In this document: piece after piece, positions 9,309 to 35,528 of the stretch | Layout: the number at the start of each line of letters is the position of its first letter | Numbering within the stretch: the stretch's first letter is position 1 | Assembly (NCBI GenBank): GCA_965285935.1 | Contig: OZ260666.1 | Location: 3,596,001-3,660,000, forward strand | Direction of reading: 5' to 3' | Source: Ophelia neglecta | Lineage: Eukaryota | Length of the DNA stretch: 64,000 bases | Program-made: the position numbers and the translations under genes | The notes under the pieces: generated by a model | Databases searched by the model: none | Told to the model about the DNA's origin: nothing | The model's input: only the letters and a program-made list of their open reading frames with translations

Positions 9309-11390
9309 TTGTACAGGACAAATACAAAAGTAATATTGCCAATGCTATATCTATATGAAACATTGTTTAACAGAATACTTAACACGGGTGTAATCCCAAG
9401 TATCTGGTCAGATGGCCTTATTGTTCCAATTTTTTTTAAAGGTAGTAGCAAAGATGCTAACAACTATAGAGGTATAACACTACTGTCTTGTGTTGTCATA
9501 TACATTTGTAGAGGATAATAGGTTAATAAATGAGAACCAGGCCGGGTTTAGAAAAGGTTATAGCACTAATGATCATGTCTTTGTTCTAAACTGTGTCCTT
9601 GAAAAATTTCTTTCACAAGGAGAAATATTGTATTGCGCATTCATAGATTATCAGAAAGCTTTCGACACTGTGTAGAGAGGAGGCATGTGGTTTAAATTGG
9701 ACTCCCAGGGTATTTGTACTGATACCAAAATCATTAAAGTTATCAGAAATATGTATAACAATGTCAAATCATGTGTATTAGTTAATGGATATAAGTCTGA
9801 GTATTTTTTCAATCTGGTGGGTTTAAGACAAGGAGAAAATTTGTCCCTCTACTCTTTTCTATTTATCTTAATGACGTAGAGCAATATTTGATTAACTCTG
9901 GTAACTCTGGTGTAAACTTCGACCCTCAAGGTTTAATTAGGTTGCTTGTATTGATGTATGCTGACGACACAGCTGTCCTGGCTGATACACAAGGTAAGCT
10001 TCAGATAGGTTTAAATGTCTTAGACAATTATTGTAAAAAGTGGAATTTGACTGTAAATATACAAAAAACCAAAGTGGTCGTATAAAGCAAAAAAAAAAAA
10101 AATTACACTTCTTTTATCAAAAAGAAGAACTAGAAAATGTATACGAATTTAAATATTACTAGGCATTATTATTATATTCAACGGAAGGTTTGATGCTTTC
10201 AAGAAACATTTAATAGAACAAGCCCGTAAAGCCACAATGCAATTGTTAAATAGAGCCAATGCCCTGTCTATACCAATAGATATGTTATGTGATCTATATG
10301 ATAAAATTGTACTGACAATATTAACATACGGTTGTGAAGTATGGGGTTATGATAACAATGATGTCATTGAGGCTGAACACCTACGATTATGTAAATACAT
10401 ACTAAAGGTCAGGCGCTCCACCTGTAATAGCATGGTATGTTGGGAACTAGGAAGGTATTCCTTGGATATTGTAATTAAATCCAGAATTGTGGGTTTCTAG
10501 GGTCGTATTGTACAAGGTAAAGAGAGCAAATTGAGCCATCAGACGCGTTACTATTTATTCAACAAGTTCATTGAAGGTACTCGGCCAGGTCATTGGCTAC
10601 AGTGCTAAAAGAAAATACTTGATGACACTGGTAAAAGTATGTTTTTTTTTAGCTTTAATATTGATTTTAACCCTGTGTGGTTGAATTTAAGGGTAAAGAG
10701 AACCTTGTCAGATCAGTTTGAGCAAAAGTGGCATGCAGATGTCCTCTCACTACCAGTCTGTAACACATATAGAGTCTTTAAATCACAGTTTAAGATGTCA
10801 GAATATTTATGTAGTACCTCTGCAGATTGGGCAACTCATCTATTTAAATTTCGAGTCATTAACCATACTTTGCCTATTGAAACAGAGAGACAGAAAGCAT
10901 TTGTTGTTCCAAGAAATGAAAGATTATGCACATTCTGTAACTGCATGAAAATTGGTGATGAATTCCATGTACTACCTGAGTGTGAGAGTGCTAAAGTCAA
11001 GACACTTAGAGAAAGGTATCTCCCTAAATATTATTATGAACAATCAAATATGTTCAAACTCGGTTTATTGATACAAAAGGGAGATCTACAAACAAGGCTT
11101 GCAATATTTATTAAAAAAGCTTTTTTTACTAAATCATCTTATGGCTGATCATGGCACTTGTGGCAACTTTATAAAACTGGTCAATTATTCTGCATACGAA
11201 TGAGTGACATATAAAATTTTCTGAATTGCACTGTATACTACTGGGTAACATAAAACTTGTGAACTATTCTGTATATGTAAATGTGCTATTTTATACTGCC
11301 CTGTACACATCTTACGCGCTATGCATTATTATGTATTATGTATCTCTGTCTCCATGGCTCATATGAGTCCTTGAGAAATAAACAATCAAC
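9309..11390 (+). mobile_element. 5'-truncated, decayed non-LTR retrotransposon (LINE) ORF2: RT plus C-terminal Cys/His finger
   Basis: Fragmented ORFs with NNYRGITLLS, QAGFRKG, FIDYQKAFD, GLRQGENLS, LMYADD (9957), ELGRYSL and RLCTFC..IGDEFH; many stops and frameshifts; AATAAA near 11377. Clade (CR1/RTE-X/Proto2-like) not resolvable by eye. Confidence 0.92.
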
Positions 11391-17449: not shown

Positions 17450-20400
17450 ATGATGGAGACCAAGTCGATCGTACTGCTGGTTTGTCTGTGCAAGGTAGAA
17501 GGTGTTATGACTGCACCATCGAGTGGTAAGTACTGGAATTTTATACACTGACGTATGTAGAATCTTAGAATCGACTTATGATTAGTCAAGAAGTGTACAC
17601 CAAGTCTCACTCATTCATCATGACTGATCGCTTTCAAGGGTATGTCGTTTTCCGACTATTATTCACATTGGAAGGGTGTTTTCGAATTTCAGCTTCTTCC
17701 GGCACAGTCACTAAAGTCACTAATAGAACCCTACAATTTGCAACTTCCACAGGCACAGTCATTCGAGTGAATATTGGCGACAACGCCACCTTGCGGTGGA
17801 AACTGCCGAAGGAAAATAGCATAGAGCTCACAAAATGTTATGACACGAACATGATCAACACATTTAACATTGTGAACATGACGGTGGTATTCAGGAGTGT
17901 TAATATGCGCCATGAGCCTCTCAGTTCAGGGACAAACGAGATCAGCCTAACGATGACATTGACAAATGTCACGAGAGAAGACGCTGGTTCGTACAACTGT
18001 CGTCGTACTAACTATAGTGAAACCAACACTGTTTTTGTCTGGGGTAAGTTCTCCTTTTGATTTTTCTTGACACTGACAGACCATGTGTCTCCTTCTTTTG
18101 TGCTTTTTTTGGCTACGTAAAAAACAATCTGTGAAGTAGTACATATATTGTCGGACTTTGGTTCTTAACCCTGAAAGAAATAGAATGTTATTTCTTTTTT
18201 TTTACCAGGTTCCTCTTATATCTATTCGTAACTGACTTTACAATCGTTGCAGTAATGTCCATCTTACCATATATAAGTATTTGATAAACCCTTAAATTAT
18301 ATTTTGATTAAGTCTCTCTTTCCCTTTGTTTGTGCGCCACTTTTTCTTTAAGGTAAAGAATTAGACAATGTAGAAAGAAGGAAAAGATTGCATACCCTAA
18401 CTTTTTGCATTATCAATACCATAAATTTAGTTACGATTGCTTCGTCAAGTTTCAGTATTGGATATACTTTTTTAATTATTAAAAGTTGAAACATCCTCAT
18501 GATTACACTACAGAAGACCACGTGAATTAATTTTTTCACATATTCAACTACTCATGGATAATACCAACCGTATATTTAAGATTTAAATTGTCTTAGCCAT
18601 ATTTTATACCTATGCCTTTCGCTCGGTCCATATGATTACATTTTCCGATTATTTTCAGGAAGACCTTTCCCAGCCCTAATAGATTCAGAGGGCTTTAAGT
18701 TGATGTGTAACGTCACTTCCACTTCTGTGCCAGAAGGCTTTCGAACTCCGATGGCTTACACTTGGTTAAGAGATGGCGCTGTTATCGGAAATACCTCGTT
18801 CGAATCTAACTATACGATTCCGATATGGAACATTATGAACCCGTTCCATAAATACTCCTGTCTAGGGAGAGAGAATGGCTCTACACTAGTGTCAGACTCA
18901 AGTAAGTAACACATACTGATCGTGCTTAGCAGCGTGGCTACCAAAACCCATGGAAGTCACAATGCACTGTTGGGTACCGAACGATAATTAACTAAGACGA
19001 GTAATGTGGATTTTACATCAGTTTCTGCAAGCATTGCTGAAACACCATTAAAATGAAACAGTTTAAACTTGGTTTAAGTCATCAAGTAATTTCAATTGAT
19101 ATATCGATGTTATGCGTTAACGATCCGATAATGAGTATGTTTTTTTTCAGGTGGTTTTGTGCAGCTTCCTGTTACCCCAGGCCTGCTGGTGATGATCACG
19201 GGATCCTGTGTCCTAACCTTACTACTTGTCTTAGTCATACTGCTCTGCTATCGACGTGAGTGTCTTGTCATATCTTCAACCTCGCATTTTATGTTTCAGA
19301 TTCCCTGTATAACGGAAATCGTGCTTAGTAAAATAGAATGCATACTCTGGGGATCAAATTATGTATAGAAGAGACATAATCATGCTTTTCGAAACCGTAG
19401 TGTGACATTCCGTACTTAGGAGTATGGGTGCAAAGGGTGAAGCTTTTCATCCGGGAAATCCATCAGGGCTACGCAGAATTTTAGTTACTTAGACTCTTAA
19501 TCAAAGATTGGACAGACCATAATTAAAGAATCATTCCATCAGTCCGTATTCCAAAAATAAGAAGGTCATATTTAGCATTTAAACGCTTCAACGCAAAGAG
19601 GCCCTTTTACAATACACGTGTTAAAGAAATCCCCACACAGCTTGTTTAAAAACAATGAAAGTAAACATAATAAACTACCTAGTATTACAAAATGCTAAGG
19701 TTCTTACTGTATTACATATTCGTTGATGTAGTTTACTAAATGGGTCAAGCATACTATCTAAGAAAATCAATATTTTAATGCACCAGTCTGAAATTAGCCA
19801 AATTTCTCTTTCATGCTACACAGTCTGATATAAATAGATCATATAAGATTTATTTCTCAATCAGATAATCACATCTTTATTTTGGTATAGAATCAAAACT
19901 AAGACAAGGAGACCGTCACCAGGCAGACAGCTTTCATGAACGAAGGCGTCGTCAGGAGTCATGCTGCTGTCACGAACAACGCTGCCGCCACGATCCAAAC
20001 TGTTGTCACCAGTCAAGGGGGCATCACGAGTCTGGCTGTCGTCACGAGGCACCCTGCCGTCACCGGCCACACTGCTGTCAGGAGCCATCGTGTGGTCACG
20101 ATCCACGCTGCGGTCAGGAGCAATCGTGTGGTCACCATCCACGCTGCGGTCAGGAGCCATCGTGTGGTCACGATCCACGCTGCGGTCAGGAGCCATCGTG
20201 TGGTCACCATCCACGCGGTGGTCAGGAGCCATCCTGCCATCACCAGCCATCCGGCCGTCAGGTAGATATCGATGATGATTACGACACGACCATGGTAGAG
20301 AACATCATGTTTGACCCTCAAATGGACGGTGAGCCGATATCCATAATTACTTTCCTTATCATACATTTATATTCATCCCCGGCACCTTTTACTGAATTTG

Positions 20401-20870
20401 GGTATAAATATTGTTTGAATATTAAGTGTGGGTGTACTGTATGGTTCAACAGCTGCAATAAATAACTTTTACCTCAAAGCTATTTCTGAGAAGAAGAGAT
20501 AAATGAGAGAATGCGCAGTGAGACCAGCTGAGCCACTGTCAGCGCACAATTGAATTTAAACTACATGCAAAAGTAGTTTTTAACTAAAAAATAAATATAA
20601 TACTAAGGACCAATATATCCCACGATATATTTTCATGGTATAAACATTTCGATTTGACAACCTTCTCTTCTCAAATTTCTGTTACAACTTTATTTCACTC
20701 GACGTCTTTCATTACAGTTAGAATACTGTTGCAAACTTATTGTTTTCCAAACAGAGGTCAGCGAGTTTGGACAGTCTAATACATTCAGACCTATCGCGTC
20801 CGGGTATTCCGAGGTTTGGGTGCCAGTACCTCCGCTATCTGGGAATACAGCCAGGCAAGGTGAGAAATGA
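17450..20870 (+). CDS. Gene B: two-Ig type-I receptor with Cys/His-rich repeat tail and ITIM-consensus motif (~442 aa)
   Basis: Phase-1 exons: 17450-17525 signal (MMETKSIVLLVCLCKVEG); 17693-18043 V-like (alternative in-phase acceptor 17753); 18659-18901 second Ig (LMC...YTWLRDG...YSC); 19151-19255 TM; 19891-20328 Cys/His repeat; 20755-20870 terminal exon (SGYSEVWVPVPP...*). Open frame throughout. Confidence 0.82.
19891..20328 (+). CDS. Gene B cytoplasmic Cys/His-rich hexapeptide repeat exon (36-bp higher-order repeat)
   Basis: tag acceptor ends 19890, gtgagc donor at 20329, 438 nt. Phase-1 frame reads ...CCCHEQRCRHDPNCCHQ...(CGQEPSCGHDPR)-type x4...; this frame is absent from the ORF track. 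Confidence 0.8.
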
Positions 20871-21001
20871 TGAAACCTGGGTAATCATATCATCAATGAT
20901 AAATGTTAAGGTCACAGTATTCTTGCAAAACATTAAAAGGTTAGTCATTTTTTGGAGTTTTGTCTTTGAAATAATAAAGCATGATCCGGAATATAATGTT
21001 A

Positions 21002-21173
21002 CAGTGGCACCTGTGTGTTTGGTCACCTGTGCACTACAGTCACCTGCGCCATAAGGTCACAAATAACAGCCTAATCCCCATGTATGCCTGCGTTAATTGA
21101 CCTGCTTATGAAGGTCACCTACATAATTTGGCAAGTTTTTGCTCTTGCCTGACCTGTTTAAAAGGTTACACTG
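21002..21173. mobile_element. Short MITE-like element with CAGT...ACTG ends and TA flanks (Tc1/pogo-type)
   Basis: ta|cagtggcacct ... aggttacactg|ta imperfect terminal inverted repeats. Confidence 0.45.
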
Positions 21174-21179
21174 TATGAC

Positions 21180-21560
21180 AAAGCTAAGCTGGGTTTGGCA
21201 GATCTTAGATGGGCTAGGAGGCTCTTTATTTTAATTGGTGTTTCAATTTGCTATAGCCTAGCATCCCTGGATACCTATATTCTCGCATGATTAACATGCA
21301 CTTACCCAAAATGTAAATTAAAACCATAATTATGAATTCTGCAGCAAAATCTTCTTCCGGCCGTCTATCGTTTCTCGACCCTCTGAGGTACCTGTATGCT
21401 AGTGTGGATAGGAGATGGAAGAAAAGGAGTAGACTCGTCCCTGAATGAGACGCTGGGATGCGATGAATGAAGGGGAAGAGGACCAAGGACGCCGGAAGGG
21501 GACAAGGATGGGGAGTGGGATCAGGGACTTTGGGTGGGACCAGGGATCTTCGGGGACTTG
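21180..21560. repeat. Dispersed repeat, diverged copy at ~57345-57730 and partial at ~22260-22330
   Basis: Shared ctaagct.ggt..gc...ttagatg, cctgtatgctag.gtggatagga and ggaaggggacaagga segments. Confidence 0.6.
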
Positions 21561-21794
21561 GGAGTTTGGTTTCAACCATCCATAGGTCTTTGTACAATTT
21601 ATTGGAGCGGGTGCCTTACTTGGGACCAGATCAATAGCCTTGGAATAAGGCCTCAGCGGTTGGTAGTATGAAATAAAATGGTAACTTTTTTTTTATCTTC
21701 CTGCAAGGCCTTGGCTGAAGCGTCAAGCGCTCGGCCTGACACCTTTACGCAATAAAGGCGCACTACTACCGGTTGAAAAATCAGCCGGTGAACA

Positions 21795-22110
21795 GCGCAT
21801 GCGCATCAATACGGAAGTGTACATTCAACATGTACATTGAATCGAGACGGTCAAAACCTGTGCACGTCGTGATGCTTAGTTGGAAAAATAATACACATTA
21901 TCTAGCATGTCAAGCACCAGTCTTAATGTCAATTGAAGTAAACCTATTTCTATCATTATTAACACATCATATTTTAAAGACTGATTTGCATAAATACATA
22001 AATAATGCGTTTGTTTACCTGTTTAACTTCGCCAGCGTCCCGAGTCCGTCATATTGCAAATCCACGTGTCACGTGACACGACTGACGTCACGGAAGCTCA
22101 TTAATATTAA
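21795..22110. promoter_or_regulatory. CpG-rich cluster of TF consensus sites (NRF1, ETS, E-box, CRE)
   Basis: GCGCATGCGC 21795; CGGAAGTG 21812; 16-bp palindrome CGTGTCACGTGACACG 22065-22080; TGACGTCA 22083; CGGAAG 22091; TTAATATTAA 22101. Confidence 0.45.
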
Positions 22111-24158
22111 GTCCGCTCATGAATTATTCAGAGCGAGCATGATCAGGCGGCCCGTACAAGGCTACGAGGGATGTAGATAGTAAACACCGTTTATAGTAAA
22201 AACATGACTTTTATTGATTTATCATACATTTTGAAGGAATCAGTGAGTAGCATTGTGGCAAGGCTACCAGATCAATGACGGGGAAGGGAAGGACTGCGGA
22301 AGGGGAACAGGGACTTTGGATGGGGTGGCGCTATTTGGTTCGAATTATCCTTGGGGCTGGGTAATACAGATGGAGGCAGATGCCTTATACGGGATCTGGC
22401 ATATTGAGTGAAACCAGGGTTTTTGTATAGGATCGGGGATTTTAAGTGGGTTCGGGGATCTTGGGTGGTGCCGGGGACCTTGGGTTAGGTAAGGGACCTG
22501 TGGTGGGAACGCAGATCTTGGGGACTATAGCCCTTTGTTGAGATCGGGGATTCCAGATGCTAACGAAGAGCTTTTGTAGTATGGGGTGCCTTGAAGGGGA
22601 TTTGGATCTGCAAACTTTTTGAATATTATGCTTGAAGCAGGGTTTATAACTATTAACGAGGGTGGTGTCAATATGCCAATGTGCCTTGAACATAGCTAGC
22701 GCGGGACTATAATTATCGTCCTTAACATATACGACTGATAATATTTTATTGGAAACAGAAAACATAACGGCTTCCTGATAAATTAGGGCGGTTTAGTTAC
22801 AACAAGTTAAAACTTTGGTTTTAAACAAAGATTATTTATATATGCTAAATTCACTAACAATAAAAGCAATACAAATTCCACAGTTTTTGGAATAAATACA
22901 GTATAATGTATAAATTGATCAAAACTCAATCTATTATCACATCAAAAGAATTCCGCAACCTCCTTGAGATAGAAAAAAAAATCAAAAGTTTGTTTTTTAC
23001 CAGAAAAGAGGCAAAAGGTAGGCTCGCGCGGACGGTACCCAAAGTATGTACTTTTCATGGCCGTAGATTTGACATTCAATGACACTCTGAATTCTATATA
23101 ATAACATTTCCTGTGTTTATCGAGAATGCTTTTATTATTGTTCTTCTATTGTTGGTAATTTGACACCGCTTAATAACTACACAATGAATTTGTAAACATA
23201 GTTAATGCACTGTATCAAAATATATGACTATTCATGCCAATTGTTTTGTAAAAAATAAAATACTTGCTTAGTTGTGAAGTCTAAGCTTTAGACCAAATGT
23301 ATCTTTAATTTTCAAGCCTATATCTGTCCGACATGTTAAATAGTGATTTACTTTGTATATAGAATATGTAAAGATTAAAATGTTTTTAAAAATGCCAGTT
23401 ACTTTAGTTGTTAGATCTATAAGGAAAATATATGCCATAATATGGAGTATTTTTCATCCATTGTCTTAATCCTACAATGACTTACAACCAGAATATTCAC
23501 CAAAGGTCGCGCATCCATTTGGGAAGGCCACGTACAAATGTGCTCAAAAAGGTATTTTCTATAAAATCAACACCATCCTTAAACACGCCCTAATTTATAC
23601 AAATTAGATTTAACAAAACCCAGGATGGCCAAATCACTTATATTAACTAAAAACATCGAAAAGTGTAAAGTTAACGCACGTTTTATTTGCTCTACGAGCT
23701 GTCTAATAGGTACCGGCTGATTCTGCTGAATCTAAACAATTATTTTTAAATAAAAGGGTGTTTTGAATGATCATGAGCTAGTATAAAGGCACAGGTGTTT
23801 CATTATACGCTGCCGGGATCTACCTTTTCGTGCGATGATCATAAAACGCGATGTATATACTCTCCTTTTATGCTTAGGATACCGATATGTCTATATTCAA
23901 AACGGTGGTATTTAAATTTGCTCCAGATAATCTACACAGACGTCTGACGTCACGATAGTCGCCTTAGACTACCAATCGCTTGTACTGATAACAACAATTG
24001 CTCGATATCCGAAATGTGTCTGACTGTAGGAAACTTAGTTAATTGCCATATAAATTACTAATTTTTCCCGTTCTGAAACAATGTAGGCCGGGACGAACGT
24101 TCACGCTATTAGAAAATAGGTCTGTTTGTATGCTTCAACGCAGTTTTCCGCTAGGCTG

Positions 24159-24600
24159 TCAGTTGGCTGCAGGCTAGAGGTTCAGTTGGCTGCAGGCTAG
24201 TGGTTCAGTTGGCTGCAGGCTAGAGGTTCAGTTGGCTGCAGGCTAGAGGTTCAGGTGGCTGCAGGCTAGAGGTTCAGGTGGCTGCAGGCTAGAGGTTCAG
24301 TTGGCTGCAGGCTAGAGGTTCAGTTGGCTGCAGGCTAGAGGTTCAGGTGGCTGCAGGCTAGAGGTTCAGGTGGCTGCAGGCTAGTGGTTCAGTTGGCTGC
24401 AGGCTAGAGGTTCAGTTGGCTGCAGGCTAGTGGTTCAGTTTGGCTGCAAGCTAGAGGTTCAGTTGGCTGCAGGCTGGAGGTTCAGGTGGCTGCAGGCTGG
24501 AGGTTCAGTTGGCTGCAGGCTAGAGGTTCAGTTGGCTGCAGGCTGGAGGTTCAGTTGGCTGCAGGCTGGAGGTTCAGTTGGTGACAAGCTAGGAGTTCAA
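24159..24600. repeat. 23-bp minisatellite (ggctagaggttcagttggctgca), ~19 units
   Basis: Direct tandem repeats with few variants and no spacers. Confidence 0.95.
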
Positions 24601-24851
24601 CTGGGAGCAGGATAGCATTTCAGCTGTTGGCAGCTCAACAAGTAAGTCTGATTTACATATTTTTAAACTTTTTGTTTATCTCGTTACTTTTTTCGGCACC
24701 TTATCATATATTTTTTGTTGTGAACGTTTTAAATGTTGGTATCACTCAGTCCATTTATCCTCAGTCTGTAAAACAGTCATATGAAATAGGCTCTGTTAAA
24801 AGTCAATTTATATGGGACACTTTCAGTGTTCACTGATAATATCCTACATCC

Positions 24852-25081
24852 AGGACCCGGTTTCTGGAAGCAGTTTAGGATTATATAAGACGATTACCGA
24901 TTAACTCAGATCGCTTTATTCGGTGTTTCAATTGACCAGGAATAAGTCTACGACCAAAATGGATAGGTTAAAACCAAATCCAGCTTCCAAAAAGCCAATT
25001 AGGACGTTAAGAGCGGTTAAGCACTTGAAAACTGATTTTAATCCGAATTGAGAGTTAAGACCGCTTCGAGAAACCGGTCCC
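24852..25081. mobile_element. ~230-bp MITE with imperfect terminal inverted repeats
   Basis: ggacccggtttctggaagcag at the left end vs gaccgcttcgagaaaccggtccc at the right; second copy at 58622-58837. Confidence 0.6.
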
Positions 25082-25992
25082 AGCACCTTATTAACCATGT
25101 ATTGTATGGGAAATATGGGACACAGGTCTATACAAGTAATAACCAAACTGGGTTATCAAATACATAGATACATCACATGTCTTGGCCACCATCCAACACG
25201 GAACAACATGGAGTTTGCCCTGGAACTGAGACGGCATGGTTGGAGGAAAGGGGTGAGTTGGTGGTTTGGTGGAGGGGGGTTGGGGGTTGGTAGTGGTGGT
25301 TGGGGGGGGGGAGTGGGGGGGGGCGGAGTTTACGGAAAGGCTGCTTAGCGTGTGATCTGATGGATTATCTAATTTATTCATTTAGTCAGCAGATCACTTC
25401 ACCACACTCCTACATTATTCAAGCTATATATATAAAATGTTTGTTTAATGACCGAGCGCCTTCCTGTAATATATATCTGGCAAGCGCAGATGATATCCTC
25501 CCGGAAATTACTGTCACATATTAGATGTTGAGGCAGACATTTAGATGGATGACATCATCGTTATTTAGGTGGGTGTTTTCTACTAGCTATTTCCTTTTGG
25601 CACGAGTTTTTGAGTTAAGAGACGCACCATTAGATCACTAGACGGGAGCATGGAGGGGGATAGGGAGTAGGAGGATGGGGAAAGAAGATTGCTTACAAAT
25701 AAACTGTTTTTAAATTCATGATAAAGATTTTTTTTTAAGTTTGTAAAAAAACGGTATAACGGTTTTTCATTTACTTCGGCTTAAAACACATATTTTCTCC
25801 CCAGAAGTTGCGAACAATTTTTTGCTTCAAAATTTTCTAGCCCCCCCCCTTCTGCTTCCCCTTGATTTCAAATTGATCGGGCAATGCTCATTTTTACTAC
25901 ACGTTACAGTTTTATATCATCTAGTAAATGTGTAAGACAAAGATATGTTTAAACCATGTTATTCAGGTCTACACATATTAACGCCTGCAATA

Positions 25993-28900
25993 ATGGGGTC
26001 CGAGTTGATCGTCCTACTTCTATGTCTGTGCCATGTAGCAGATGTTATGACCGCACCAGCTAGTGGTAAGTACCGCACCACCTAGGGGTAAGTACCGCAC
26101 CAGCTAGTGGTAAGTACAGCACCAGCTAGGGTTAAGTACCGCACCACCTAGTGGTAAGTACCGCACCACCTAGTGGTAAGTACCACACCAGCTAGTGGTA
26201 AGTACCGCACCAGCTAGTGGTAAGTACCGCACCAGCTAGTGGTAAATACCGCACCAGCTAGTGTAATTTACCACACCAGCTAGTGGTAAGTTCCGCACCA
26301 GCTAGTGGTAAGAACCGCAACAGATAGTGGTAAGTACCGCGCTACCCAGTGGTAAGCACCGTGCCGCCTTTGTGGTAAGTACCCAACCACTTTGTGGTGA
26401 GTACCACGCCACCTTGTGTTAAGTACCCATCCATCTAGTGGTAAGAACCAGAATGGTGTAATGACTTGGGTTAGTAAGGTATTGGACGCCTTAATATGTC
26501 TGTGTTTAAAGGATAAAGATAAAGGTGTTTTCTGAATCATATTCACATTTGAAGAAGGCAAACATTATGAAGATGGATTTATTTATAACTTATAGAACCC
26601 TACAATGTGTAACTTCCACAGGTACAGTCACTCGAGTGAATATTGGCGACAACGCCATCCTGCGGTGGAAACTGCCGAAGGAAAATGACATAGAACCAAC
26701 AAAATGTTATGACACGAACAAGAACAACACATTTAACATTGTGAACATGACCGTGTTACCCAAGAGTGGTAACTTCAGCCTGGGCTTGTCTGAGCTTTTG
26801 AATGCAGGGAGAAACGAGATCAGCCTAACAATGACATTGACAAATGTGACGAGGGAAGACGCTGGTTCGTACAAATGTCGTCGTACTAGCTATAGTGAAA
26901 CCAACACTGTTTTTGTCTGGGGTAAGTTTCCTTTGGGTTTTTCCGTGGCCCTGAAAGACTATGTGTCCGATATTTTAATTGGCGACTGAAAAAACAATCA
27001 GTGAACTAGTAAATATATCGTCGTATTTTAGTATAAGTAAGACTTTCTTAATGATTTCTTTCATTAAATGTCTATTCCCGTTTATTTTCTTCATGGTGAA
27101 GAATAGGACAATGTAACTCTCCTTTTCTAGAAGGAAAAATAAATATGCAACCTCAAACGTGTTTAATAATCGATATGAAAATAAACTATACTTCGAGCCA
27201 CCCAGCAAACCATTAATCATAACATTTAGGTGTTCAAATATTTACTGTTTTATCATATATATCAAGTAGTATCTTTAAATTTTAAAATGGTCAAGTAACT
27301 GCTATATTTTATACTTATCGCCCTCACTGGGTGCGATGGAATGAATTCATATCATTATGTTTGCGTTGCAGGAAAACCAACTCCAGCCATAATTGATACA
27401 GAGGGTTTAAAATTAATGTGTGACGTCATTTCCACCTCTCTACCAGACTACGTTCGACCTCCGATGACTTACAGTTGGTTACGAGATGGCGCTTTAATCG
27501 GAAAAACCACGGATGAGTCTACCTATACGATACCCATACACAGCATATTTAACCCGTTCTCTGAATACTCCTGTCGAGGGAGGGAGTATGGCTCAAGTCT
27601 ACACTCAGACTCAAGTAGGCAAAACACATTAATAGTGGCTAGCAATATGGCTAAGCAAAACTGATTAAATTCATATCGACAACTTGCTATGGAACGCTTG
27701 TATATTGGCGAACAGGGTATATTTGTCCAATGTGCTGCAACCCGCTGCCAAAAGTACCAATTGGAAAGCTGATAAATCCTTTGTCGTGCACGAGGGGCGG
27801 AGAGGTGGGAATTACAGTCTATTAAGAGGTCGATCCCAAGTTTCGGAAATACTCCTGCCCCCCCCCCCCAACCCCGCAACTTGTATAGGGAGTATGTTAA
27901 TCGTATGGTCAATATTAACATTACACACTATTTTGAACAATATACAAACGAGTTCTGCTATAATCCGCTTGCAGAACAGGATTGTCTACAACTTTCCTAC
28001 CCCCGACCCCCCCCCCCCCCCCGCCACATACCCTCCCCAACCCTTCCAACCAATATCTATGTTTTATCCTGCAATTGATTCCAATGTAACGATCGTTTGT
28101 GTTTATTATACGAATATGAGCGTTTGTGTTTTAGGTGGCTCTGTACGGCTTCCTGTCTCTCCAAGACTGGTGGCGACAATCGCAGGATTTTGTGCCATAA
28201 CAATCCTTACACTACTTGTCGCACTATCCTGCTGTCAACGTGAGTGTATTTTCATTTCTTCAAAGTTAAGCACGTGTTCATATGCATTAAACTCCCTTGA
28301 TATCATCGCAACCGTATCTCAATATTATAAATAACATTACTTGAGGGACTGACATAACAAGAATTCACAAAGATCTATTAGACTAAAGTTTAACACTGCT
28401 TTTATATTACATGTACATAATATAATATTATCTTACTGCCATTTTATCTTACACTATCTCGGCGCATCAAATTGTTATCTTTCCGAATCAAATAATCTTA
28501 TTTTAATTTTGTTCTAGATTCAAAACAAAGAAAGCGAGCTGCATCAAGTTCCGTCACAAACGAACACGATCGTCAGAAGTCAGGTTGTCGTCACGAGAAA
28601 CGCGACCGACACGAGCCAGGCTGCCAACACGAACCCATCTGTCGTCAGAAGTCAGGCTGCCATCATGAACCTATCTGTCGTCAGAAGTCAGGCTGCCATC
28701 ATGAACCCATCTGTCGTCAGAAGTCAGGTTGCCATCACGAACAACGCTGCCATCATAGCCAAAGCCGTCACGAATCAAGCTACAATCAAGCACCTAGTTG
28801 TTGTCACGAGGAAGGTTGCCGACCTAATCCCCGCTGTCTTCAAGAGACACTCAGCCGTCATGAGTCAAACCCCCATCTGGAGACGACACTCCATGGTAAC

Positions 28901-29324
28901 GAGCCGCCCAACCGTCAGAACAATGATGAACATGTTGAGAGCATCACGGTAGAGAAGAGCGCCACGTTTCAGCCTCAATTGGAGGGTGAGTTTAAGGCCA
29001 TTATTTGACCGGCTAGTATAGTGAAGTGTTTCCGCGAGCTCTCATTATCCTGCCTGACATCCCCATTTGTCAGACTATTCCACTGACTAAATCAAGCGTC
29101 CAATATCCTTCAAACTTCTTTACTTTTGCGTTAAAACTATTCTTTCACAATAATCGAAACTTCCTAGATGAATTAATTAATGTTTCTTCATTTTCTAATT
29201 CGTGTCTTAACCACCAGAGGCCAGCGAGGGACAGCCTAGCACAGTCTTACCTACAGAAGTTCGATATTCATTTGTTTGGGTACCACGACCTCCGCCTTGT
29301 GTGCAGAAAGCGACCCAAAAATGA
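25993..29324 (+). CDS. Gene C: paralog of gene B; two Ig domains, TM, Cys/His repeat tail, ITIM-consensus motif (~431 aa)
   Basis: Phase-1 exons: 25993-26065 signal (MGSELIVLLLCLCHVAD); 26622-26921 V-like; 27372-27614 second Ig; 28135-28239 TM; 28518-28985 Cys/His repeat; 29218-29324 terminal exon (VRYSFVWVPRPPP...*). AATAAA at 29346. Exon sizes 243 and 105 are identical to gene B. Confidence 0.82.
26050..26448 (+). repeat. 22-bp minisatellite (accgcaccagctagtg|gtaagt) derived from gene C's signal-exon end and splice donor, ~18 units
   Basis: The first unit is the true exon end plus GTAAGT; later units degrade toward 26448. Confidence 0.92.
28518..28985 (+). CDS. Gene C cytoplasmic Cys/His-rich repeat exon
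   Basis: 468 nt, phase 1-1; reads ...GCRHEKRDRHEPGCQHEPI(CRQKSGCHHEPI)-type x3...CCHEEGC...; gtgagt donor. Confidence 0.8.
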
Positions 29325-30427
29325 AGACACCTATTCGCAAATACCAATAAAAAAGTAATTCCAAATTTTATCCCAAAATAATTAACGGCTTTATTGACTG
29401 TTGATGTTCGTCTGTGAAATATTAAACGACATGCAGTCGCACTTAATAATATGCATTAATATATAACAACAATGGGACTACTATATGTACTGAGGTGCTT
29501 ATGCTGTGGCATGCTATGTTATGCTATGCTTCTCTGGTTTAGCCCCATTTTGGGCTCTTGGGGTTTGTCTCGGAGGATTCTGTGGGGACTTAGCTTCCCT
29601 TCTGATATGGGAACCCTTTGCACAATCACCAAATGACAGCGGATATCTCTATAAGTAAGCCCTAGATTCGCCGTCAGGACGAACAGACGTCTTTACTTTT
29701 ATATAAAGATGATTTTCATGATAGGGACTTAAATGGGACCGTTCCTTTCCTTTAACTCCAGAAAAACACGCTCCTACATTTTATCTCATTTTAAAATACA
29801 CGGTTCCCTTTATCTATCACCAGAAAACACTTTCCCACACACTATCGGCCGGAAATACTACGTTTCGTATCAATCAAGCATATTTTTTATGCTTTTTTGA
29901 GTTAATACCGTAAAAAAGGGGGTTGTGTTGCGCGGTTGCAATATTTTGACGGTAAAAAAAAGTATAACATAGGTGAACATAATAAAAAAAAAAGTATCAT
30001 TGTACCCATTATGTACCCTTGGTTCTTGCAGGTCCCCTATAAAGTTTTCCTCTGTGTCGCTGGGTTCTTTTTGGTCTCGTGTATAGTTTTTATCAGTTTC
30101 GTGAGAGTACCAGCTAGTCTCCTCTAGAGATTTTATCAGTGTCACTTGGTTTCCTACAGTATTTTCCATGAATGGTATCTGCTGGTCCCCTCTAGAGTTT
30201 TCCGCCGTGTCGCTGGGGTCAGGCGTAAATATTGAATCAGTCGGTATATTACAAATCAACTGAACTCCAATGCCAGTACTATCAAGAAGTTAAGCTTTTC
30301 GTTGCCATTTCAATTAATTACTTGGACAACTCCAAATAGTTTTAAGAATACGGAGCCTTTTACACTGCTATGCCCTTGTAGACGGAAGTGGCACAAAATG
30401 TACATTTGATTTTATAAATTTTTAAGA

Positions 30428-30575
30428 CGTGTTATTTGTCCGTTTGCTATGAATTTTATTATTATAATAATGTGATTTATCTAATATGTTTCATGCGACA
30501 TTCCAATTCAACTTGTTTCGCACTATCTGTATTTAGTGACACAAATAGAATTATTCAAGCAAAAAACAACATGCT
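30428..30575 (-). pseudogene. Inverted relic of a gene-A-type cytoplasmic exon with in-frame stop
   Basis: Reverse complement gives gcttgaataattctatttgtgtcactaaatacag|ata... and ...ataacac|gtcttaaaat, resembling the flanks of exons 3837-3917 and 4659-4769; translation DSAKQVELECRMKHIR*. Confidence 0.5.
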
Positions 30576-31529
30576 TTTCCATTGTTTATTTAACCCTTTA
30601 CAGAAGAATATGAGGAATTTAATGCGTTTAAAAATAACATAATAATACAACAAACGATGATGCTCAGTGTCTAGGGCTGTTATGTCTTCATGTTAGCTGA
30701 TAAGGTCTTAAAACGGTATTCATCACATTAAGCTGAATATTATAAAAACAATAATATTAGAATAATTGTAAATCTATGCGAATATTATATACAAACCAGT
30801 AGTATATTGTCCATTTTATGGCTTTTCTTCACATCTAAGTAAATATGAGTATAATAATTAGTATGACAATTACATCGGTTCTTCATAATTATATTATTTC
30901 TATGTTGATTTCAATATTATTTATTAAGTAACTAGTATAGTAACCGCTATAACGATATTCATCCCATCAATCTGAGTATAAGACAAAATGAATGACAGTC
31001 GTTATAACGGTAGGGAACACAACATGTTAATTTGAAATATAAACAATATATGAGCAAGTATCTTAATCATCGTAATGATGGTTGTTCGTCTTACTGAATA
31101 TGGTATAAACAGTTAGTAGTACAATACTACTAATAGTATCCGTGTTCATCATAACTAATATTTTTGAAATGTATGATTACAAAAGAAGTATTACAATCAA
31201 TATAACAATGTTCTTTACAACCATCGGAATATTATACAACAAAAGTAGTCTGTATGCCATTAAAAGTAGTCTTTATAATGTTGGTTAACACATCAAGCTA
31301 AATTCAAATAGTGCTGGCACGGCGCCAGCACTATTAGATTCTCTACAAGCACACTGTGTGAGCTATAAGATAAACATTTAAGAGCCGAGGTTCCCTCTCT
31401 CCCATGGGCTCCCATTTCCCGCATTTAGCCTCACTCGTTCTTCATGCACCCATTCCTGTATTCAACTACCTGATCCATCCTTCCTCCAAAAATATGCGTG
31501 GCAGGCGTATATAAAGTAGAAGTCACTAC

Positions 31530-32230
31530 GCCTTTAAAGGTAACTTGTTCCCTAGGCAGCATGATTTAGCAAACAAGTAAGCTAAGGACGTCATTCAACT
31601 ATGTTTGGCATATCCTGATCATTTATGATAGGTATATGATAATCTGTATTGTATTGTTAATATAAAGCATTTGTAGTGTGAACACCTTAAATATAGAAAT
31701 TTAACTTAATTGTGCCTGCATTTAAAGACACTTTCTAACCTCCGCGTAGCTTATGAGAGATATTTTATCCTATATTACACTTCCGCGACAACGCACCAAA
31801 TCACTTTGTCATGTGTAAAAACCATGTTATCGTACCGGGAACATATCTCCATTAATCATTATTGCCTGCCAGAGACTTGTGCCCGGAAATTTTACCTCTC
31901 CGTGACCGGGAAACATAAAACGGAGGTGGAGGGAGAGTAGTCATTTTAATGACCGAGGCGTTCATTTCATGAATTTATTACATTTCATGTCGATAACAGA
32001 GACAGAGCGGCATGTTTTTTTACTGAATTATGATAAATTGTAAGTCAAACAATTAGAAGGTCGATTAACCTGATATGTCGTAGAAAGTGGTCGGCGTTTG
32101 TTGTCAACAAGCTATTTCCTATGGGAATTCTCACATTTGGCAAAGTGTTTATTGTTTAATAACACTATAGGGTTCCGTGGGTCTTAGCTCTTCAATATAA
32201 TAATAATATAACTAAAACAAATTTCATCAA
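31530..32230. repeat. Inverted copy of ~60-680
   Basis: Reverse-complement similarity to the region upstream of gene A. Confidence 0.85.
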
Positions 32231-32499
32231 AATTTACCAACACTATGACTAACGGCTGAGCGTACATTATCATATGTATGAAGCAATGTATTTGTTTTGT
32301 ACGCGTAATAATTGCGTGTTTGATAAATTTGAGTTGATGAATCGTCTGTTAGTGAGGTCTTAATATATGCAAGCTTTCAGATGATGGATACCAATTATTC
32401 AACCTACGCTACTGGGAGCGTCAATATTTGAGTGACTCATAACTGACAATGAAATCTACGGTAAACACTGAAATATTTTTCAACGGCGAAACTCGCAGA

Positions 32500-32895
32500 A
32501 ATGTGCAACATTCTTTTATGAAAATTGTAACATACCTGTATGAAATTTGTAACATTCCTGTATGAAATGTGAAACATTCCTGTATGAAATGTGAACCATT
32601 CCTGTATGAAATATGAAACATTCCTGTATTAAATTAGCAAAATTCACGTATGAAATGTTTAACATTCCTGTAGGAAATGTTTAACATTCCTGTAGGAAAT
32701 GCCTAACATTCCTGTATTAAATGTTCAACATTCCTGTATGAAATGTTCAACACCTATACGAATTGTGCAACATTCCTGTTGGAAATGTGCAACATTCCAG
32801 TATGAAATGTCAAACATTCCTGTGAGAAACGCCTAACATTCCTGTATGAAATGTTCAATATTCCTGTATAAAATATTTAACATTCCTGTAGGAAC
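32500..32895. repeat. 21-bp minisatellite (aacattcctgtatgaaatgtN), ~19 units
   Basis: Direct tandem repeats; same family as window positions 1-50 on the opposite strand. Confidence 0.93.
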
Positions 32896-33177
32896 TTTGC
32901 AATATTTTTGTTCTAGTAGAGTAGATTCTAAGTGACTCTTGCCTTACACTAACTAAATGGTTGTACTCATCACCTGACACATTAGCCTTATATTAACCCA
33001 CTAGTTGCGCATATCACAGCAATTACACGATTCATTCCGTTCCCTTCATGCGGCTGCTGGAAGGTTACACTCATTAGTCAGTGAGAGTTAATAAAAAGAT
33101 AGGGATGCATTGTCTAACTATAGGATCTTAATATGGAATATTGATTAAACGCGGAGGTACGGAGGCTAGGCGATGGC

Positions 33178-33215
33178 GGAAACTCGTAACGGGAAGTTTC
33201 TATGTCTCTATATAA
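33178..33215 (+). promoter_or_regulatory. Putative gene D core promoter: GGGAAGTTTC (ETS/kB-like) plus TATA-like box
   Basis: gaaactcgtaacgggaagtttctatgtctctatataa, homologous to the gene B promoter unit. Confidence 0.45.
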
Positions 33216-33595
33216 CTAGAATTGGCTACATTATCATGTAGATAACAGAGAGAGTGCGAGTGGCCCTGTCTATGTATAGATGGAAAGGCACACAACTAGA
33301 GATATGGATTACTTGTTAATTGGTGGAAAAGATGTGGGTGTATGTTATCAACCCACTATTTCCTTCCAGAATTTTCACATTTGGACACGATATTAAAAGT
33401 GCATAAACACCTTGAGCTACCGCGGGTCTCAGGCCTACATTTACATGGACTTTCAAGCAATATGACTACTCGCTGAGCGCATATTATTCTTTGTGTAGGG
33501 TGGCGTTTATTTGTGTGATCGATGAGTGTATTGATAACCAAGTAGCTGACTAATGCCCTGTTATTTAGCTGCCAGTGAAAATAAGCTTGCATGTG

Positions 33596-35528
33596 ATGGA
33601 GTCCAAGCTGATCGTACTACTAGTCTGTCTGTGTAAGATAACAGATGTTATGACCGCACCACCTGGCGGTAAGTACCAGAATTCATACATTGACGTATGT
33701 AGATTTCTTAGAATAAATTTATGATTGGTCAAGTAGTATACACCAAGTCTTATTCATTCATCATAACTGGCCGCTTTTAAAGTAACCTTATTCACCCTGA
33801 AAGGAGGATTTTATGCAAAGAATGATAAACATGGTAAGCCTTTTTTCCAGCTTCTTCAGTCACAGTCACTCGAGTGAGTGTTGGTGAAAAGGCCACCTTG
33901 TGGTGGAATCTTCCTGAGACAAATAGCAGAGAGCCACTCAAATGTTTTGATAAGAACGAGATGAACACATTTAACATTGTAAACGGGAGTGTGGTATTAA
34001 GAAATAGTAATAAATACAGCGTTAAGCATCTCTACGAAAAGATAAATGAGACCGGCCTAGAGATGACCTTCAAAAATGTCACGAGAAATGACGCTGGCCT
34101 CTACAACTGTTGTCGTACTAACTATAGTGAAAGCAATACACTTTTTGTCTGGGGTAAGTTCCCTTTCCTTTTCGCTCGGCCCTGAAAGGTGTAGATAAGT
34201 TGTTATTTCTTGTTGACGAAGTGTCTCATATATGTAGTTATAACTATATTACAGTCGCTTAGGCAATGCATAGATTGTCATATTTCAGTGCAGATAAACT
34301 CTTAAAGTAGTATCTCATGTATTAAATATCTAAGCTTCATAGTTTTTTGCATTTTTTTCCACAATGGGAAAGGTATAGCAACGTGGATAGCACTAATTGT
34401 CCAACTTCGAACATATTTCATTATGTTTATAGCAATTCATTAATTTACGAATGATTCGTCGGATTTCAATATTGGATATACTTGGTTAAATGAACTACAG
34501 GTTGATCTTTCTTATACTTGCAATAAAGCAGTAAATAGGTCTAGGTAATATAGATGCGTTACCATATTTATCGTCTTCTTGAGTCTTCTTGAGTCATAGA
34601 CTCTACACTAGTGTCAGACTCAAGTAAGCAACACACACTAATAGTGCTAACCAACGTAGCTTCTAAAACCGATGGAAATTCCCACTGCATGTTTTTACAC
34701 CGAACGTCGGTGAACTAATACGCGCATGTCCAGTTAAATCGGCTATCCGTATGCATGATTGTCCCAAGCCAGAGTGAGGTCCGATCCTCAGCGCTCTGGC
34801 CCTCGCTGCACTCATCTTGTATCCTCTAGACGCCGGCTGAAATAAAATGTGGACTTAAGACGGGCCTTTCTACTACTCTCTCTCCCGTCACTTAAAGTTG
34901 TTATTTTGCAATTACTATCAACTAATATATGATTTGAATATATTTAATATAATGTTTTCAGGTGGTTTTGTACGTCTTTCTATCACTCTGGGACTACTTG
35001 TGGGAATCACGGGAATTGGTGTCATAATATCCGCAGTACTCCTTATTATACTGGTCTGCTATCTACGTACGTGTCTTTTATCTTGAAAGAGAATTCCGCG
35101 CCTTCGTGTATTTTTTACTTTCTGAGCGCATATTCCCCGATCGAACAGAACAAAATGACCTGATTTCTCATCCATTTCATAAAATCCGAGACATTTCTTC
35201 CTCTAGCAAATAATCACATCTTAAATTTGGTCTAGGATCAAAACAAAGAAATGGACCTGCGTCAACCCAAACGACTTCCATTGTTGTCACAGACGAACAC
35301 GGTCGTTCCAGACCAGGTTGTCTTCACGAGCAAAGAAACCGTAATGAGCTCAGCTGTCCTCACGAACACAGGGGTCGTCAGGAGTCTGGCTGCTGTCACG
35401 AACAACGTTGCCGTCATGAGCGCTGTTGTCACGAGTCAAGGGGCAATCACGTCCATAGATGTCGTCACGAACCACTCTGCCGTCTACAGCCAAGCCGCAA
35501 TCGGGAGCAAACGCAGGAAAAATTATAA
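33596..35528 (+). CDS. Gene D: paralog with the second Ig exon deleted, a shorter Cys/His tail and no ITIM (~257-265 aa); may be a pseudogene
   Basis: 33596-33668 signal (MESKLIVLLVCLCKITD); 33851-34153 V-like; possible in-frame 24-nt remnant 34600-34623; 34962-35066 TM; 35236-35528 tail (...GCCHEQRCRHERCCHE...QEKL*). Confidence 0.7.

What the first reader, a model, noticed from the sequence alone, without database searches (positions are those of the whole stretch)
19891..35528. Hidden Cys/His hexapeptide-repeat cytoplasmic domain in three Ig receptors
Seen: the ORF track reports Val/Thr/Ala-rich frames, but the phase set by the TM exon gives a different open frame in all three genes, with Cys roughly every 6 residues (C-x-[HQ]-[EDHK]-x-x). 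B expanded CGQEPSCGHDPR, C expanded CRQKSGCHHEPI, and D has GCCHEQRCRHERCCHE. The independent 36-bp expansions preserve the period. I do not know a characterised Ig receptor with such a tail. Inference: a metallothionein-like Zn/Cu-binding or redox-sensing module, a palmitoylation array, or a metal-bridged clustering/kinase clasp between TM and ITIM.
Basis: partly seen in the sequence, partly recalled or inferred. Interest (0 to 1): 0.85.

Follow-up and report, generated by a model that had tools for sequence, protein, structure and literature searches.

The report
Cysteine/histidine hexad-repeat tail in Ig receptors
A family of about 33 neighbouring invertebrate immunoglobulin-type receptor genes carries, between the membrane helix and an inhibitory-type tyrosine motif, an intracellular stretch with a cysteine every six residues and many histidines; it has no known relative and probably binds metal, but neither its expression nor its function has been tested.

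Summary
Observation confirmed. In genes B and C, and in degraded form in D, the 105-nt TM exon ends in phase 1. The next exon, read in that phase, gives hexads C-x-[H/Q]-E-[P/S]-x.

Evidence that this is the coding frame:
- The own genome holds about 33 copies of this exon, all on contig C9 at 3.07-4.06 Mb.
- In all 18 intact copies tested for stops, this is the only frame without one.
- The 27 intact exons are 354-645 nt long, always a multiple of 3.
- Substitutions pile up at the wobble position of this frame (83/86/130, p=0.001).
- The exon changes more slowly than its introns (0.196 vs 0.286 changes per site).
- Cys columns are among the slowest-changing.

B and C continue in frame into a conserved ITIM-consensus plus WVPxPP terminal exon. 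D has an in-frame stop, an exon length that breaks the frame, and no full Ig2 exon, so it is probably a pseudogene.

No RNA data exist. The tail has no relative in 1.84 billion representative proteins, Pfam or PDB, and is predicted to be disordered. It is not metallothionein-like (CxC 0-1, CxxC 0). It is an array of 7-12 CxH motifs, the half-site of the fish CD8 and shark CD4 zinc clasp. My best guess is a Zn-binding array; this is untested.

The scan already found this family on a paralogous copy about 435 kb away (s1-741948), with the same reading.

The parts
17450..17521 (+). Gene B signal-peptide exon (approximate limits)
   Evidence: tblastn match to the C signal exon. The open segment holds a Met followed by a hydrophobic leader.
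17731..18063 (+). Gene B Ig domain 1 exon (approximate limits)
   Evidence: Pfam ig PF00047, E=1.8e-5, 25.4 bits against a cut-off of 21.8. 76% identical to C Ig1.
18655..18924 (+). Gene B Ig domain 2 exon (approximate limits)
   Evidence: 63% identical to C Ig2. C Ig2 gives only weak Pfam Ig_3/Ig_2 hits.
19151..19255 (+). Gene B TM exon, 105 nt, phase 1 to 1
   Evidence: Only one frame gives a hydrophobic helix. Acceptor cag and donor GTGAGT read. The same exon, with a phase-1 donor, lies upstream of every paralog tail exon.
19891..20328 (+). Gene B Cys/His hexad-repeat tail exon, 438 nt, phase 1 to 1; 18 Cys, 18 His, 10 CxH
20024..20260 (+). 18/36/72-bp tandem array inside the B tail exon
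   Evidence: TRF: period 36, 4.9 copies, 91% match; period 18, 12.5 copies, 64% match.
20755..20870 (+). Gene B terminal exon, read in phase 1: ITIM-consensus SGYSEV followed by WVPVPP, stop TGA at 20868-20870
   Evidence: AATAAA/ATTAAA-type signals at 20932 and 20973.
25990..26061 (+). Gene C signal-peptide exon (approximate limits)
26600..26950 (+). Gene C Ig domain 1 exon (approximate limits)
   Evidence: Pfam ig PF00047, E=2.6e-5, 24.9 bits against a cut-off of 21.8.
27362..27640 (+). Gene C Ig domain 2 exon (approximate limits)
   Evidence: Weak Pfam Ig_3 (E=0.039) and Ig_2 hits. Conserved in B.
28135..28239 (+). Gene C TM exon, 105 nt, phase 1 to 1
28518..28985 (+). Gene C Cys/His hexad-repeat tail exon, 468 nt, phase 1 to 1; 13 Cys, 18 His, 7 CxH
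28570..28747 (+). 36/72-bp tandem array inside the C tail exon
   Evidence: TRF: period 36, 3.5 copies, 93% match.
29218..29324 (+). Gene C terminal exon, read in phase 1: ITIM-consensus VRYSFV followed by WVPRPP, stop TGA at 29322-29324
   Evidence: Poly(A)-type signal at 29346. The core motif is invariant across the C-type paralogs checked but one (L003 has a Val-to-Leu change), and differences lie mostly at the wobble position.
33853..34176 (+). Gene D Ig domain 1 exon (approximate limits); no full Ig2 exon follows
34962..35066 (+). Gene D TM exon, 105 nt, phase 1 to 1
35236..35528 (+). Gene D truncated Cys/His tail (9 Cys) ending at an in-frame TAA at 35526-35528. The homologous donor lies at 35563/35564, which makes the exon 328 nt, not a multiple of 3.

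Best explanation
What it is. B and C are intact members of a family of type I membrane receptors that evolves by gene duplication and loss. About 33 copies lie within roughly 1 Mb. Each receptor has a signal peptide, two Ig-like domains and one TM helix.

The cytoplasmic part has four pieces:
- a basic juxtamembrane stretch;
- a real, translated array of hexads C-x-[H/Q]-E-[P/S]-x, of variable length (about 9-23 Cys), very hydrophilic and disordered without ligand;
- an acidic segment;
- a conserved C-terminal exon with an ITIM-consensus tyrosine motif and WVPxPP.

The array grows and shrinks by duplication of 18-, 36- and 72-bp units. Selection keeps the frame and, above all, the cysteines.

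How it most likely works (inferred). The array is a multidentate site for soft metals, most likely Zn2+. It is a string of 7-12 CxH half-sites flanked by Glu or Asp. Each half-site supplies two of the four ligands of a tetrahedral site. The other two would come from a neighbouring hexad, from another receptor tail, or from a Cys-bearing partner, as in the CxC or CxH zinc clasp of CD4/CD8 with Lck. Metal loading would then compact or cross-link the tails, or buffer local Zn2+ as proposed for the acidic tail of LAG-3. Either effect would change how the distal ITIM is presented.

Status of each step. The exon structure, frame, periodicity, conservation and family size are shown. Metal binding and its effect on signalling are inferred.
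For: Frame and coding status
- The TM exon ends in phase 1 in all 27 copies examined.
- The Cys/His frame is the only one without stops in all 18 intact exons tested.
- All 27 intact exon lengths (354-645 nt) are multiples of 3, but not all are multiples of 18.
- Parsimony changes by codon position are 83/86/130, chi-square p=0.001.
- The exon shows 0.196 changes per site against 0.286 in the flanking introns.
- The terminal exon, read in the phase handed on, is conserved and varies mostly at the wobble position. Poly(A) signals follow it.

Pattern
- Cys periodicity was reached by 0 of 2000 shuffles in 11 of 12 tails.
- There are 7-12 CxH motifs per tail against 2-3.5 in shuffles.
- Cys columns change at 0.21 per site against a family mean of about 0.38.
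- Cys codons are TGC and TGT in about equal numbers.
- GRAVY is about -1.6 and only 8-11% of residues are hydrophobic.
- AlphaFold2 gives mean pLDDT 47 and no secondary structure.

Precedent
- CxH replaces CxC in the zinc clasp of fish CD8 and shark CD4 and binds LCK in a Zn-dependent way (PMC10768021).
- The acidic stretch of the LAG-3 tail is thought to compete for Zn2+ (PMC10768021).
- Zinc-clasp structure: PMC12198760.
Against: - No RNA run was found. The three runs that hold the stretch are DNA contigs without splice joints. Expression and junctions are therefore unproven.
- Constraint is only moderate. Positions 1 and 2 change at about 58% of the intron rate. His columns are no slower than average (0.34 per site). 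His and Gln differ only at the wobble base, so part of the H/Q pattern may be mutational.
- The periodicity follows from the 18-bp repeat origin and does not by itself prove function.
- No partner is known, and no homologue is known in any other organism.
- The Zn co-fold of two tails gave no answer.
Confidence: 0.4

Rival explanations
1. Neutral spacer. The hexad array is a translated but functionally indifferent low-complexity linker, a coding minisatellite. It only sets the distance between the membrane and the ITIM. The Cys/His content is inherited from the founder 18-bp unit.
For: - The arrays come from recent 18/36/72-bp duplications at 91-93% unit identity.
- Length varies widely among paralogs, 354-645 nt.
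- Some C-type pairs show even substitution counts by codon position, 12/11/12.
- His is no slower than average.
- The tail is predicted to be disordered.
Against: - Cys columns are among the slowest (0.21 per site), and both Cys codons are used.
- Old, diverged hexads (64% nucleotide match) still keep Cys at position 1 and CA-N at position 3.
- The exon is 2-3 times less diverged than its introns in distant pairs.
- The pattern persists in the B, C and D types, whose tails are only about 40% identical.
Confidence: 0.25
2. S-acylation array. The cysteines are palmitoylated one after another. This zips the tail onto the inner membrane leaflet and controls access to the ITIM or sorting into membrane domains.
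For: - Extra Cys sit at the TM-cytosol border (CY or CC at the end of the TM exon), a typical acylation position.
- The tail has many cytosolic Cys, and a basic stretch follows the membrane.
- CD4 and CD8 tails are both palmitoylated and zinc-binding (PMC12198760).
Against: - The array starts 23-28 residues from the membrane.
- It is strongly hydrophilic and charged (GRAVY -1.6; 8-11% hydrophobic).
- Cys are spaced one in six and not in a dense string.
- The partnering His and Glu positions have no role in acylation.
Confidence: 0.12
3. Redox switch. The free thiols sense oxidants such as those of the respiratory burst. They form intra- or intermolecular disulfides that cluster or silence the receptor.
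For: Many cytosolic thiols lie next to His and Arg, which can lower the thiol pKa. This is inference only.
Against: No test was possible. Nothing in the sequence separates this from metal binding, and the two can coexist, since Zn-thiolate sites are redox-sensitive.
Confidence: 0.08
4. Not expressed as read. Either the family is silent, or a downstream AG 13 nt inside the exon is used, so that the Val/Thr/Ala frame is translated and ends before the ITIM exon.
For: - No RNA data exist.
- An AG 13 nt downstream of the main acceptor in B (19902-19903) and C (28529-28530) would bring the Val/Thr/Ala frame into phase. I read this.
- That frame has only 1-3 stops per exon.
- About 5 of 33 copies are broken.
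Against: - The first AG after the pyrimidine tract is the conserved TAG acceptor in all copies.
- The excess of changes falls on codon position 2 of the Val/Thr/Ala frame, the wrong place for a coding frame.
- That frame always hits a stop before the donor.
- The terminal exon shows purifying selection in the phase set by the Cys/His reading.
Confidence: 0.07

Closest known systems
Zinc clasp of CD4/CD8 with Lck, including the CxH variant of fish CD8 and shark CD4
   Same: A short Cys/His motif (CxC or CxH) in the cytoplasmic tail of an Ig-domain type I receptor supplies two of the four ligands for Zn2+ (PMC10768021, PMC12198760). The tails here carry CxH 7-12 times.
   Different: - One motif per tail there, an array of hexads here.
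- No CxCP motif here.
- No sequence homology.
- No known CxxC partner here.
- Those receptors activate; these carry an ITIM-consensus motif.
- Metal binding is untested here.
LAG-3 cytoplasmic tail (ITIM-like motif plus acidic EP repeat)
   Same: An inhibitory-type Ig receptor whose tail combines a tyrosine or ITIM-like motif with a repetitive acidic, proline-containing stretch. That stretch is proposed to compete for Zn2+ (PMC10768021). Here [E/D]-P recurs 5-8 times per intact tail.
   Different: - LAG-3 has no Cys/His array.
- Its repeat is a dipeptide at the C-terminus.
- No homology.
- The order along the tail differs: here the array lies before the ITIM.
Metallothioneins
   Same: Cys-rich, likely unfolded without metal, and plausible binders of soft metals.
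   Different: - Cys is only 8-13% against about 30%.
- His is 10-13%.
- CxC occurs 0-1 times and CxxC never.
- Part of a membrane receptor.
- No Pfam or PDB match.
ITIM-bearing IgSF inhibitory receptors (PECAM-1, Siglecs, KIR-type; invertebrate examples such as oyster NCAM1 and the Hydractinia Alr family)
   Same: Ig ectodomain, one TM helix and a [S/V]xYxxV motif near the C-terminus. A clustered multigene family with broken copies.
   Different: None of these is described with a periodic Cys/His array between the TM helix and the ITIM. Paper searches found none.
Cysteine-string protein and Cys-rich viral glycoprotein tails (palmitoylated)
   Same: Many cytosolic Cys close to a membrane.
   Different: Those strings are dense and sit in a hydrophobic or basic context at the membrane. 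Here there is one Cys per six residues in a charged, hydrophilic stretch of 90-140 residues.

Membership tests
Metallothionein | High Cys content (about 20-30%) arranged in CxC, CxxC and CC clusters | tested here: not met
   Cys 8-13%. CxC 0-1, CxxC 0 and CC 1-5 per tail.
Metallothionein | Sequence match to a metallothionein family model or a solved metallothionein | tested here: not met
   No Pfam hit on tails C and D, and only a sub-threshold Cementoin hit on B. 0 PDB hits with the profile at E<=10.
Zinc clasp (CD4/CD8-Lck type) | CxC(P) or CxH motif in the receptor's cytoplasmic tail | tested here: met
   CxH 7-12 per tail against 2-3.5 in shuffles; CxCP 0. The motif definition comes from PMC10768021.
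Zinc clasp (CD4/CD8-Lck type) | A partner kinase that supplies a CxxC pair, and Zn-dependent binding | not tested
   No partner was sought in the unannotated genome. Binding needs biochemistry.
Zinc clasp (CD4/CD8-Lck type) | Homology to CD4, CD8 or LAG-3 | tested here: not met
   The tail profile found no related protein among 1.84 billion representatives.
ITIM-bearing IgSF receptor | Extracellular Ig domain(s) | tested here: met
   Pfam ig PF00047 is above its cut-off for Ig1 of B (25.4 bits) and C (24.9 bits). Ig2 is only weakly matched.
ITIM-bearing IgSF receptor | Single TM helix with the tail on the cytosolic side | tested here: met
   A hydrophobic stretch of about 23 residues followed by Lys/Arg. 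The topology is inferred from the positive-inside rule.
ITIM-bearing IgSF receptor | [S/I/V/L]xYxx[I/V/L] motif in the tail | tested here: met
   B has SGYSEV and C has VRYSFV, conserved in their paralogs. D lacks it.
ITIM-bearing IgSF receptor | Phosphotyrosine-dependent recruitment of an SH2 phosphatase | not testable with these tools
   Needs biochemistry.
Cysteine-string / S-acylated Cys cluster | A dense run of Cys in a hydrophobic or basic context at the membrane | tested here: not met
   One Cys per six residues. The array starts 23-28 residues after the TM helix. GRAVY about -1.6.

The most novel reading that the evidence does not exclude
The tail is a multivalent zinc clasp. A string of CxH half-sites binds Zn2+ and so cross-links receptor tails or captures a Cys-bearing kinase or phosphatase. 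Alternatively it acts as a local zinc sink, as proposed for LAG-3. Either way, inhibitory signalling would depend on intracellular zinc or redox state. The zinc-clasp principle of vertebrate co-receptors would then have an independent, amplified counterpart in an invertebrate immune-type receptor family.
Probability: 0.17. Interest if true: 0.8.

Novelty: new variant of a known kind. Interest (0 to 1): 0.55.

Why it matters
If the array binds metal, the family would link inhibitory Ig-receptor signalling to zinc or redox state. It would do so through an array of the same two-ligand motif that vertebrate co-receptors use once. The natural length variants would make this testable.

The case also shows that start-codon-based ORF calling hides a whole protein domain here. 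Only the splice phase reveals the frame. Gene models for this unannotated genome should be checked for it.

Tried and rejected
- RNA evidence. The look-up of sequencing runs listed no RNA run. The three runs laid on gene B are DNA contigs that cover the introns and show no joints, so nothing can be said about splicing or expression.
- Homologues of the tail. A profile of 12 tails against 1.84 billion representatives gave 4 hits at E<=1e-3, all low-complexity look-alikes. One is a 12-residue repeat in a Batillaria hypothetical protein. Another is an ENA ORF with CHxxxx hexads, which is not from this genome and whose DNA could not be fetched.
- Other libraries. Pfam gave nothing above threshold. 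The Cementoin hit on B (E=0.034, 14.2 bits against a cut-off of 27) is discarded as repeat noise. The PDB profile search gave 0 hits. The ESM Atlas gave no usable hit.
- Structure. AlphaFold2 on the 12-tail alignment gave mean pLDDT 47 and no secondary structure, so no fold search was run.
- Co-fold. Complex prediction with two copies of the C tail (residues 22-100) and four Zn returned no answer, score 0.00. This counts neither for nor against binding.
- Other loci in the genome. Hits on C7 near 88.406 Mb are an unrelated 18-bp satellite that reads NPLCGQ/NPLCSW.
- Taxon. COX1 was found on contig C223. A stop-free piece gave only unnamed proteins, the best at 96% identity.
- Joined model. I did not search the joined spliced protein. 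Full-length relatives that only a joined query would find were therefore not sought.
- Papers. Searches, and a term look-up in one review, found no periodic Cys/His receptor tail.

Full report
**Observation**

The window is G000:C9:3596001-3660000 of a 762-Mb eukaryotic genome with about 38% GC. Genes B, C and D each have a 105-nt exon: 19151-19255, 28135-28239 and 34962-35066. Only one frame of that exon gives a hydrophobic helix, and it ends with one base of a split codon before a GT donor.

The next exon starts after a pyrimidine tract and TAG, at 19891, 28518 and 35236. The ORF list shows only the Val/Thr/Ala and Leu/Ser/Pro frames, because the Cys/His frame has almost no ATG, GTG or TTG codon.

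Tandem Repeats Finder reports periods of 18, 36 and 72 bp at 20024-20260 and 28570-28747. The expanded 12-residue units differ between B and C, so the expansions were independent. Cys spacing in multiples of six is far beyond shuffles: 0 of 2000 shuffles reached it in 11 of 12 tails, and 7 of 2000 did for D.

**Is this the coding frame?**

There is no RNA. The only runs that hold the stretch are DNA contigs covering the introns without joints. The case therefore rests on paralogs.

Searching the own genome with the C and B tails found about 33 copies of this exon: 9 B-type, 13 C-type and 11 D-type. All lie on C9 between 3.07 and 4.06 Mb, as repeated B-C-D units on both strands.

- Every copy examined has the same TAG acceptor and GTGAG donor.
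- Every copy has a TM exon with a phase-1 donor 120-639 nt upstream.
- In all 18 intact exons tested, the Cys/His frame has no stop. The Val/Thr/Ala frame has 1-3 stops and the third frame 4-12.
- The 27 intact exons measure 354-645 nt. All lengths are multiples of 3, but not all are multiples of 18.
- Counted by parsimony on trees of each type, changes fall 83/86/130 on codon positions 1/2/3 of the Cys/His frame (chi-square p=0.001). That excess would sit on position 2 of the Val/Thr/Ala frame.
- The exon changes at 0.196 per site against 0.286 in the flanking introns. In distant pairs the exon is 2-3 times less diverged than its introns.

Downstream, a CAG|AG acceptor opens a last exon, 20755-20870 in B and 29218-29324 in C. 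Read in phase 1, it gives [S/V]xYSxV followed by WVPxPP and a stop. Its core is nearly invariant among C-type copies (one Val-to-Leu change, in L003), with differences mostly at the wobble position. Poly(A)-type signals follow within about 100 nt.

I put the Cys/His frame at about 90%.

**Gene D and other broken copies**

D is degraded. It has an in-frame TAA at 35526-35528. Its exon is 328 nt up to the homologous donor. No ITIM exon was found, and only a remnant of Ig2 remains. Some other tail copies are broken too: L008 and L038 by stops, L030 by a frameshift, and L047 is a fragment. This pattern fits a multigene family that gains and loses copies.

**Anatomy of the domain**

- The hexad consensus is C-[H/R/C/G]-[H/Q]-E-[P/S]-[R/G/S].
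- Cys columns are among the slowest of the common residues, 0.21 changes per site against a mean near 0.38. His is average at 0.34.
- Cys is coded by TGC and TGT about equally.
- His and Gln at position 3 differ only at the wobble base, so part of that alternation may be mutational.
- The tails have 8-13% Cys, 10-13% His, GRAVY about -1.6 and 8-11% hydrophobic residues. The array begins 23-28 residues after the membrane.
- AlphaFold2 gives no structure, with mean pLDDT 47.
- The ends of the exon are conserved across types. They are a basic, Ser/Thr-rich start and an acidic end.
- Both the TM exon and the tail exon are phase 1 to 1, so skipping the tail exon would stay in frame. This is inference.

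**What it resembles**

The tail profile finds no relative among 1.84 billion representative proteins, in Pfam, in PDB sequences or in the ESM Atlas.

It is not metallothionein-like in motif structure: CxC occurs 0-1 times and CxxC never. The enriched motif is CxH, 7-12 per tail against 2-3.5 in shuffles.

CxH is the form of the zinc-clasp half-site found in CD8 of early jawed vertebrates and in shark CD4. [quoted passage not shown] The acidic stretch of the LAG-3 tail, next to its ITIM-like motif, is thought to compete for Zn2+ (PMC10768021; clasp structure in PMC12198760).

These are functional analogies and not homology. No partner is known here.

**Mechanism and its rivals**

My best reading is a metal-binding array, most likely for Zn2+. 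It would compact, cross-link or dock the tail and so modulate the distal ITIM. I give this 0.4 as a whole; the structural part alone is much firmer.

| Rival | Confidence |
|---|---|
| Indifferent coding minisatellite that only sets spacing | 0.25 |
| S-acylation array | 0.12 |
| Redox switch | 0.08 |
| Not expressed as read | 0.07 |

The co-fold of two tails with Zn gave no answer and counts for nothing.

**Earlier scan notes**

The scan had already followed up the same domain on a paralogous B-type copy about 435 kb upstream (s1-741948), with the same conclusion. I reached my results before seeing that note. They agree, and mine add the codon-position test, the intron comparison, the status of D and the CxH link. 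Note s1-746339, on the ITIM plus WVPxPP motif, is confirmed. The organism was not identified.

**Verdict**

This is a real, lineage-restricted and so far undescribed tail domain on otherwise ordinary Ig/ITIM-type receptors: a new variant of a known kind. Interest is moderate to high, but neither expression nor biochemistry is known.

Noticed in passing
window 26050-26449: A 22-bp minisatellite of about 18 copies starts at the end of gene C's signal exon. Its unit contains the donor-like GGTAAGT, so the splice donor is repeated many times (also scan note s1-746370).
   Followed up: partly
window 24159-24581 and 32498-32906: Two more minisatellites, 23 bp x 18.3 copies and 22 bp x 18.7 copies, lie between the receptor genes. 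Their role is unknown.
   Followed up: no
window 59521-60432: A partial copy of a C-type gene: the 3' part of Ig1, Ig2 and the start of the following intron. No TM exon or Cys/His tail follows within the window.
   Followed up: partly
window 2142-2483: A further Ig1-like exon, 37% identical to C Ig1, from an upstream gene without a Cys/His tail hit.
   Followed up: no
window 20753-20756 and 29216-29219: The terminal exons of B and C both open with a tandem CAG|AG acceptor (NAGNAG type). Only the first AG keeps the frame open.
   Followed up: partly
window 20858-20859: A strong donor-like AAG|GTGAGA lies three codons before the B stop. B may therefore have an alternative 3' end beyond the ITIM/WVP motif.
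   Followed up: no
G000:C7:88405991-88406968 (L053, L059): An 18-bp satellite whose open frame (113-238 aa in the fetched loci; up to 352 aa by the genome search) reads NPLCGQ/NPLCSW hexapeptides, with Cys also every six residues. It is unrelated to the receptor tails and it is unclear whether it is coding.
   Followed up: partly
G000:C9:3.07-4.06 Mb: The B-C-D unit is amplified about nine times on both strands. Some copies are 97-99% identical at about 435 kb spacing, for example window B, C and D against 3180677, 3189045 and 3196218. This is either recent segmental duplication or an assembly duplication.
   Followed up: partly
window 10237-11148: ORFs of 87 and 169 aa lie between genes and are not part of the receptors. 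I did not examine them.
   Followed up: no
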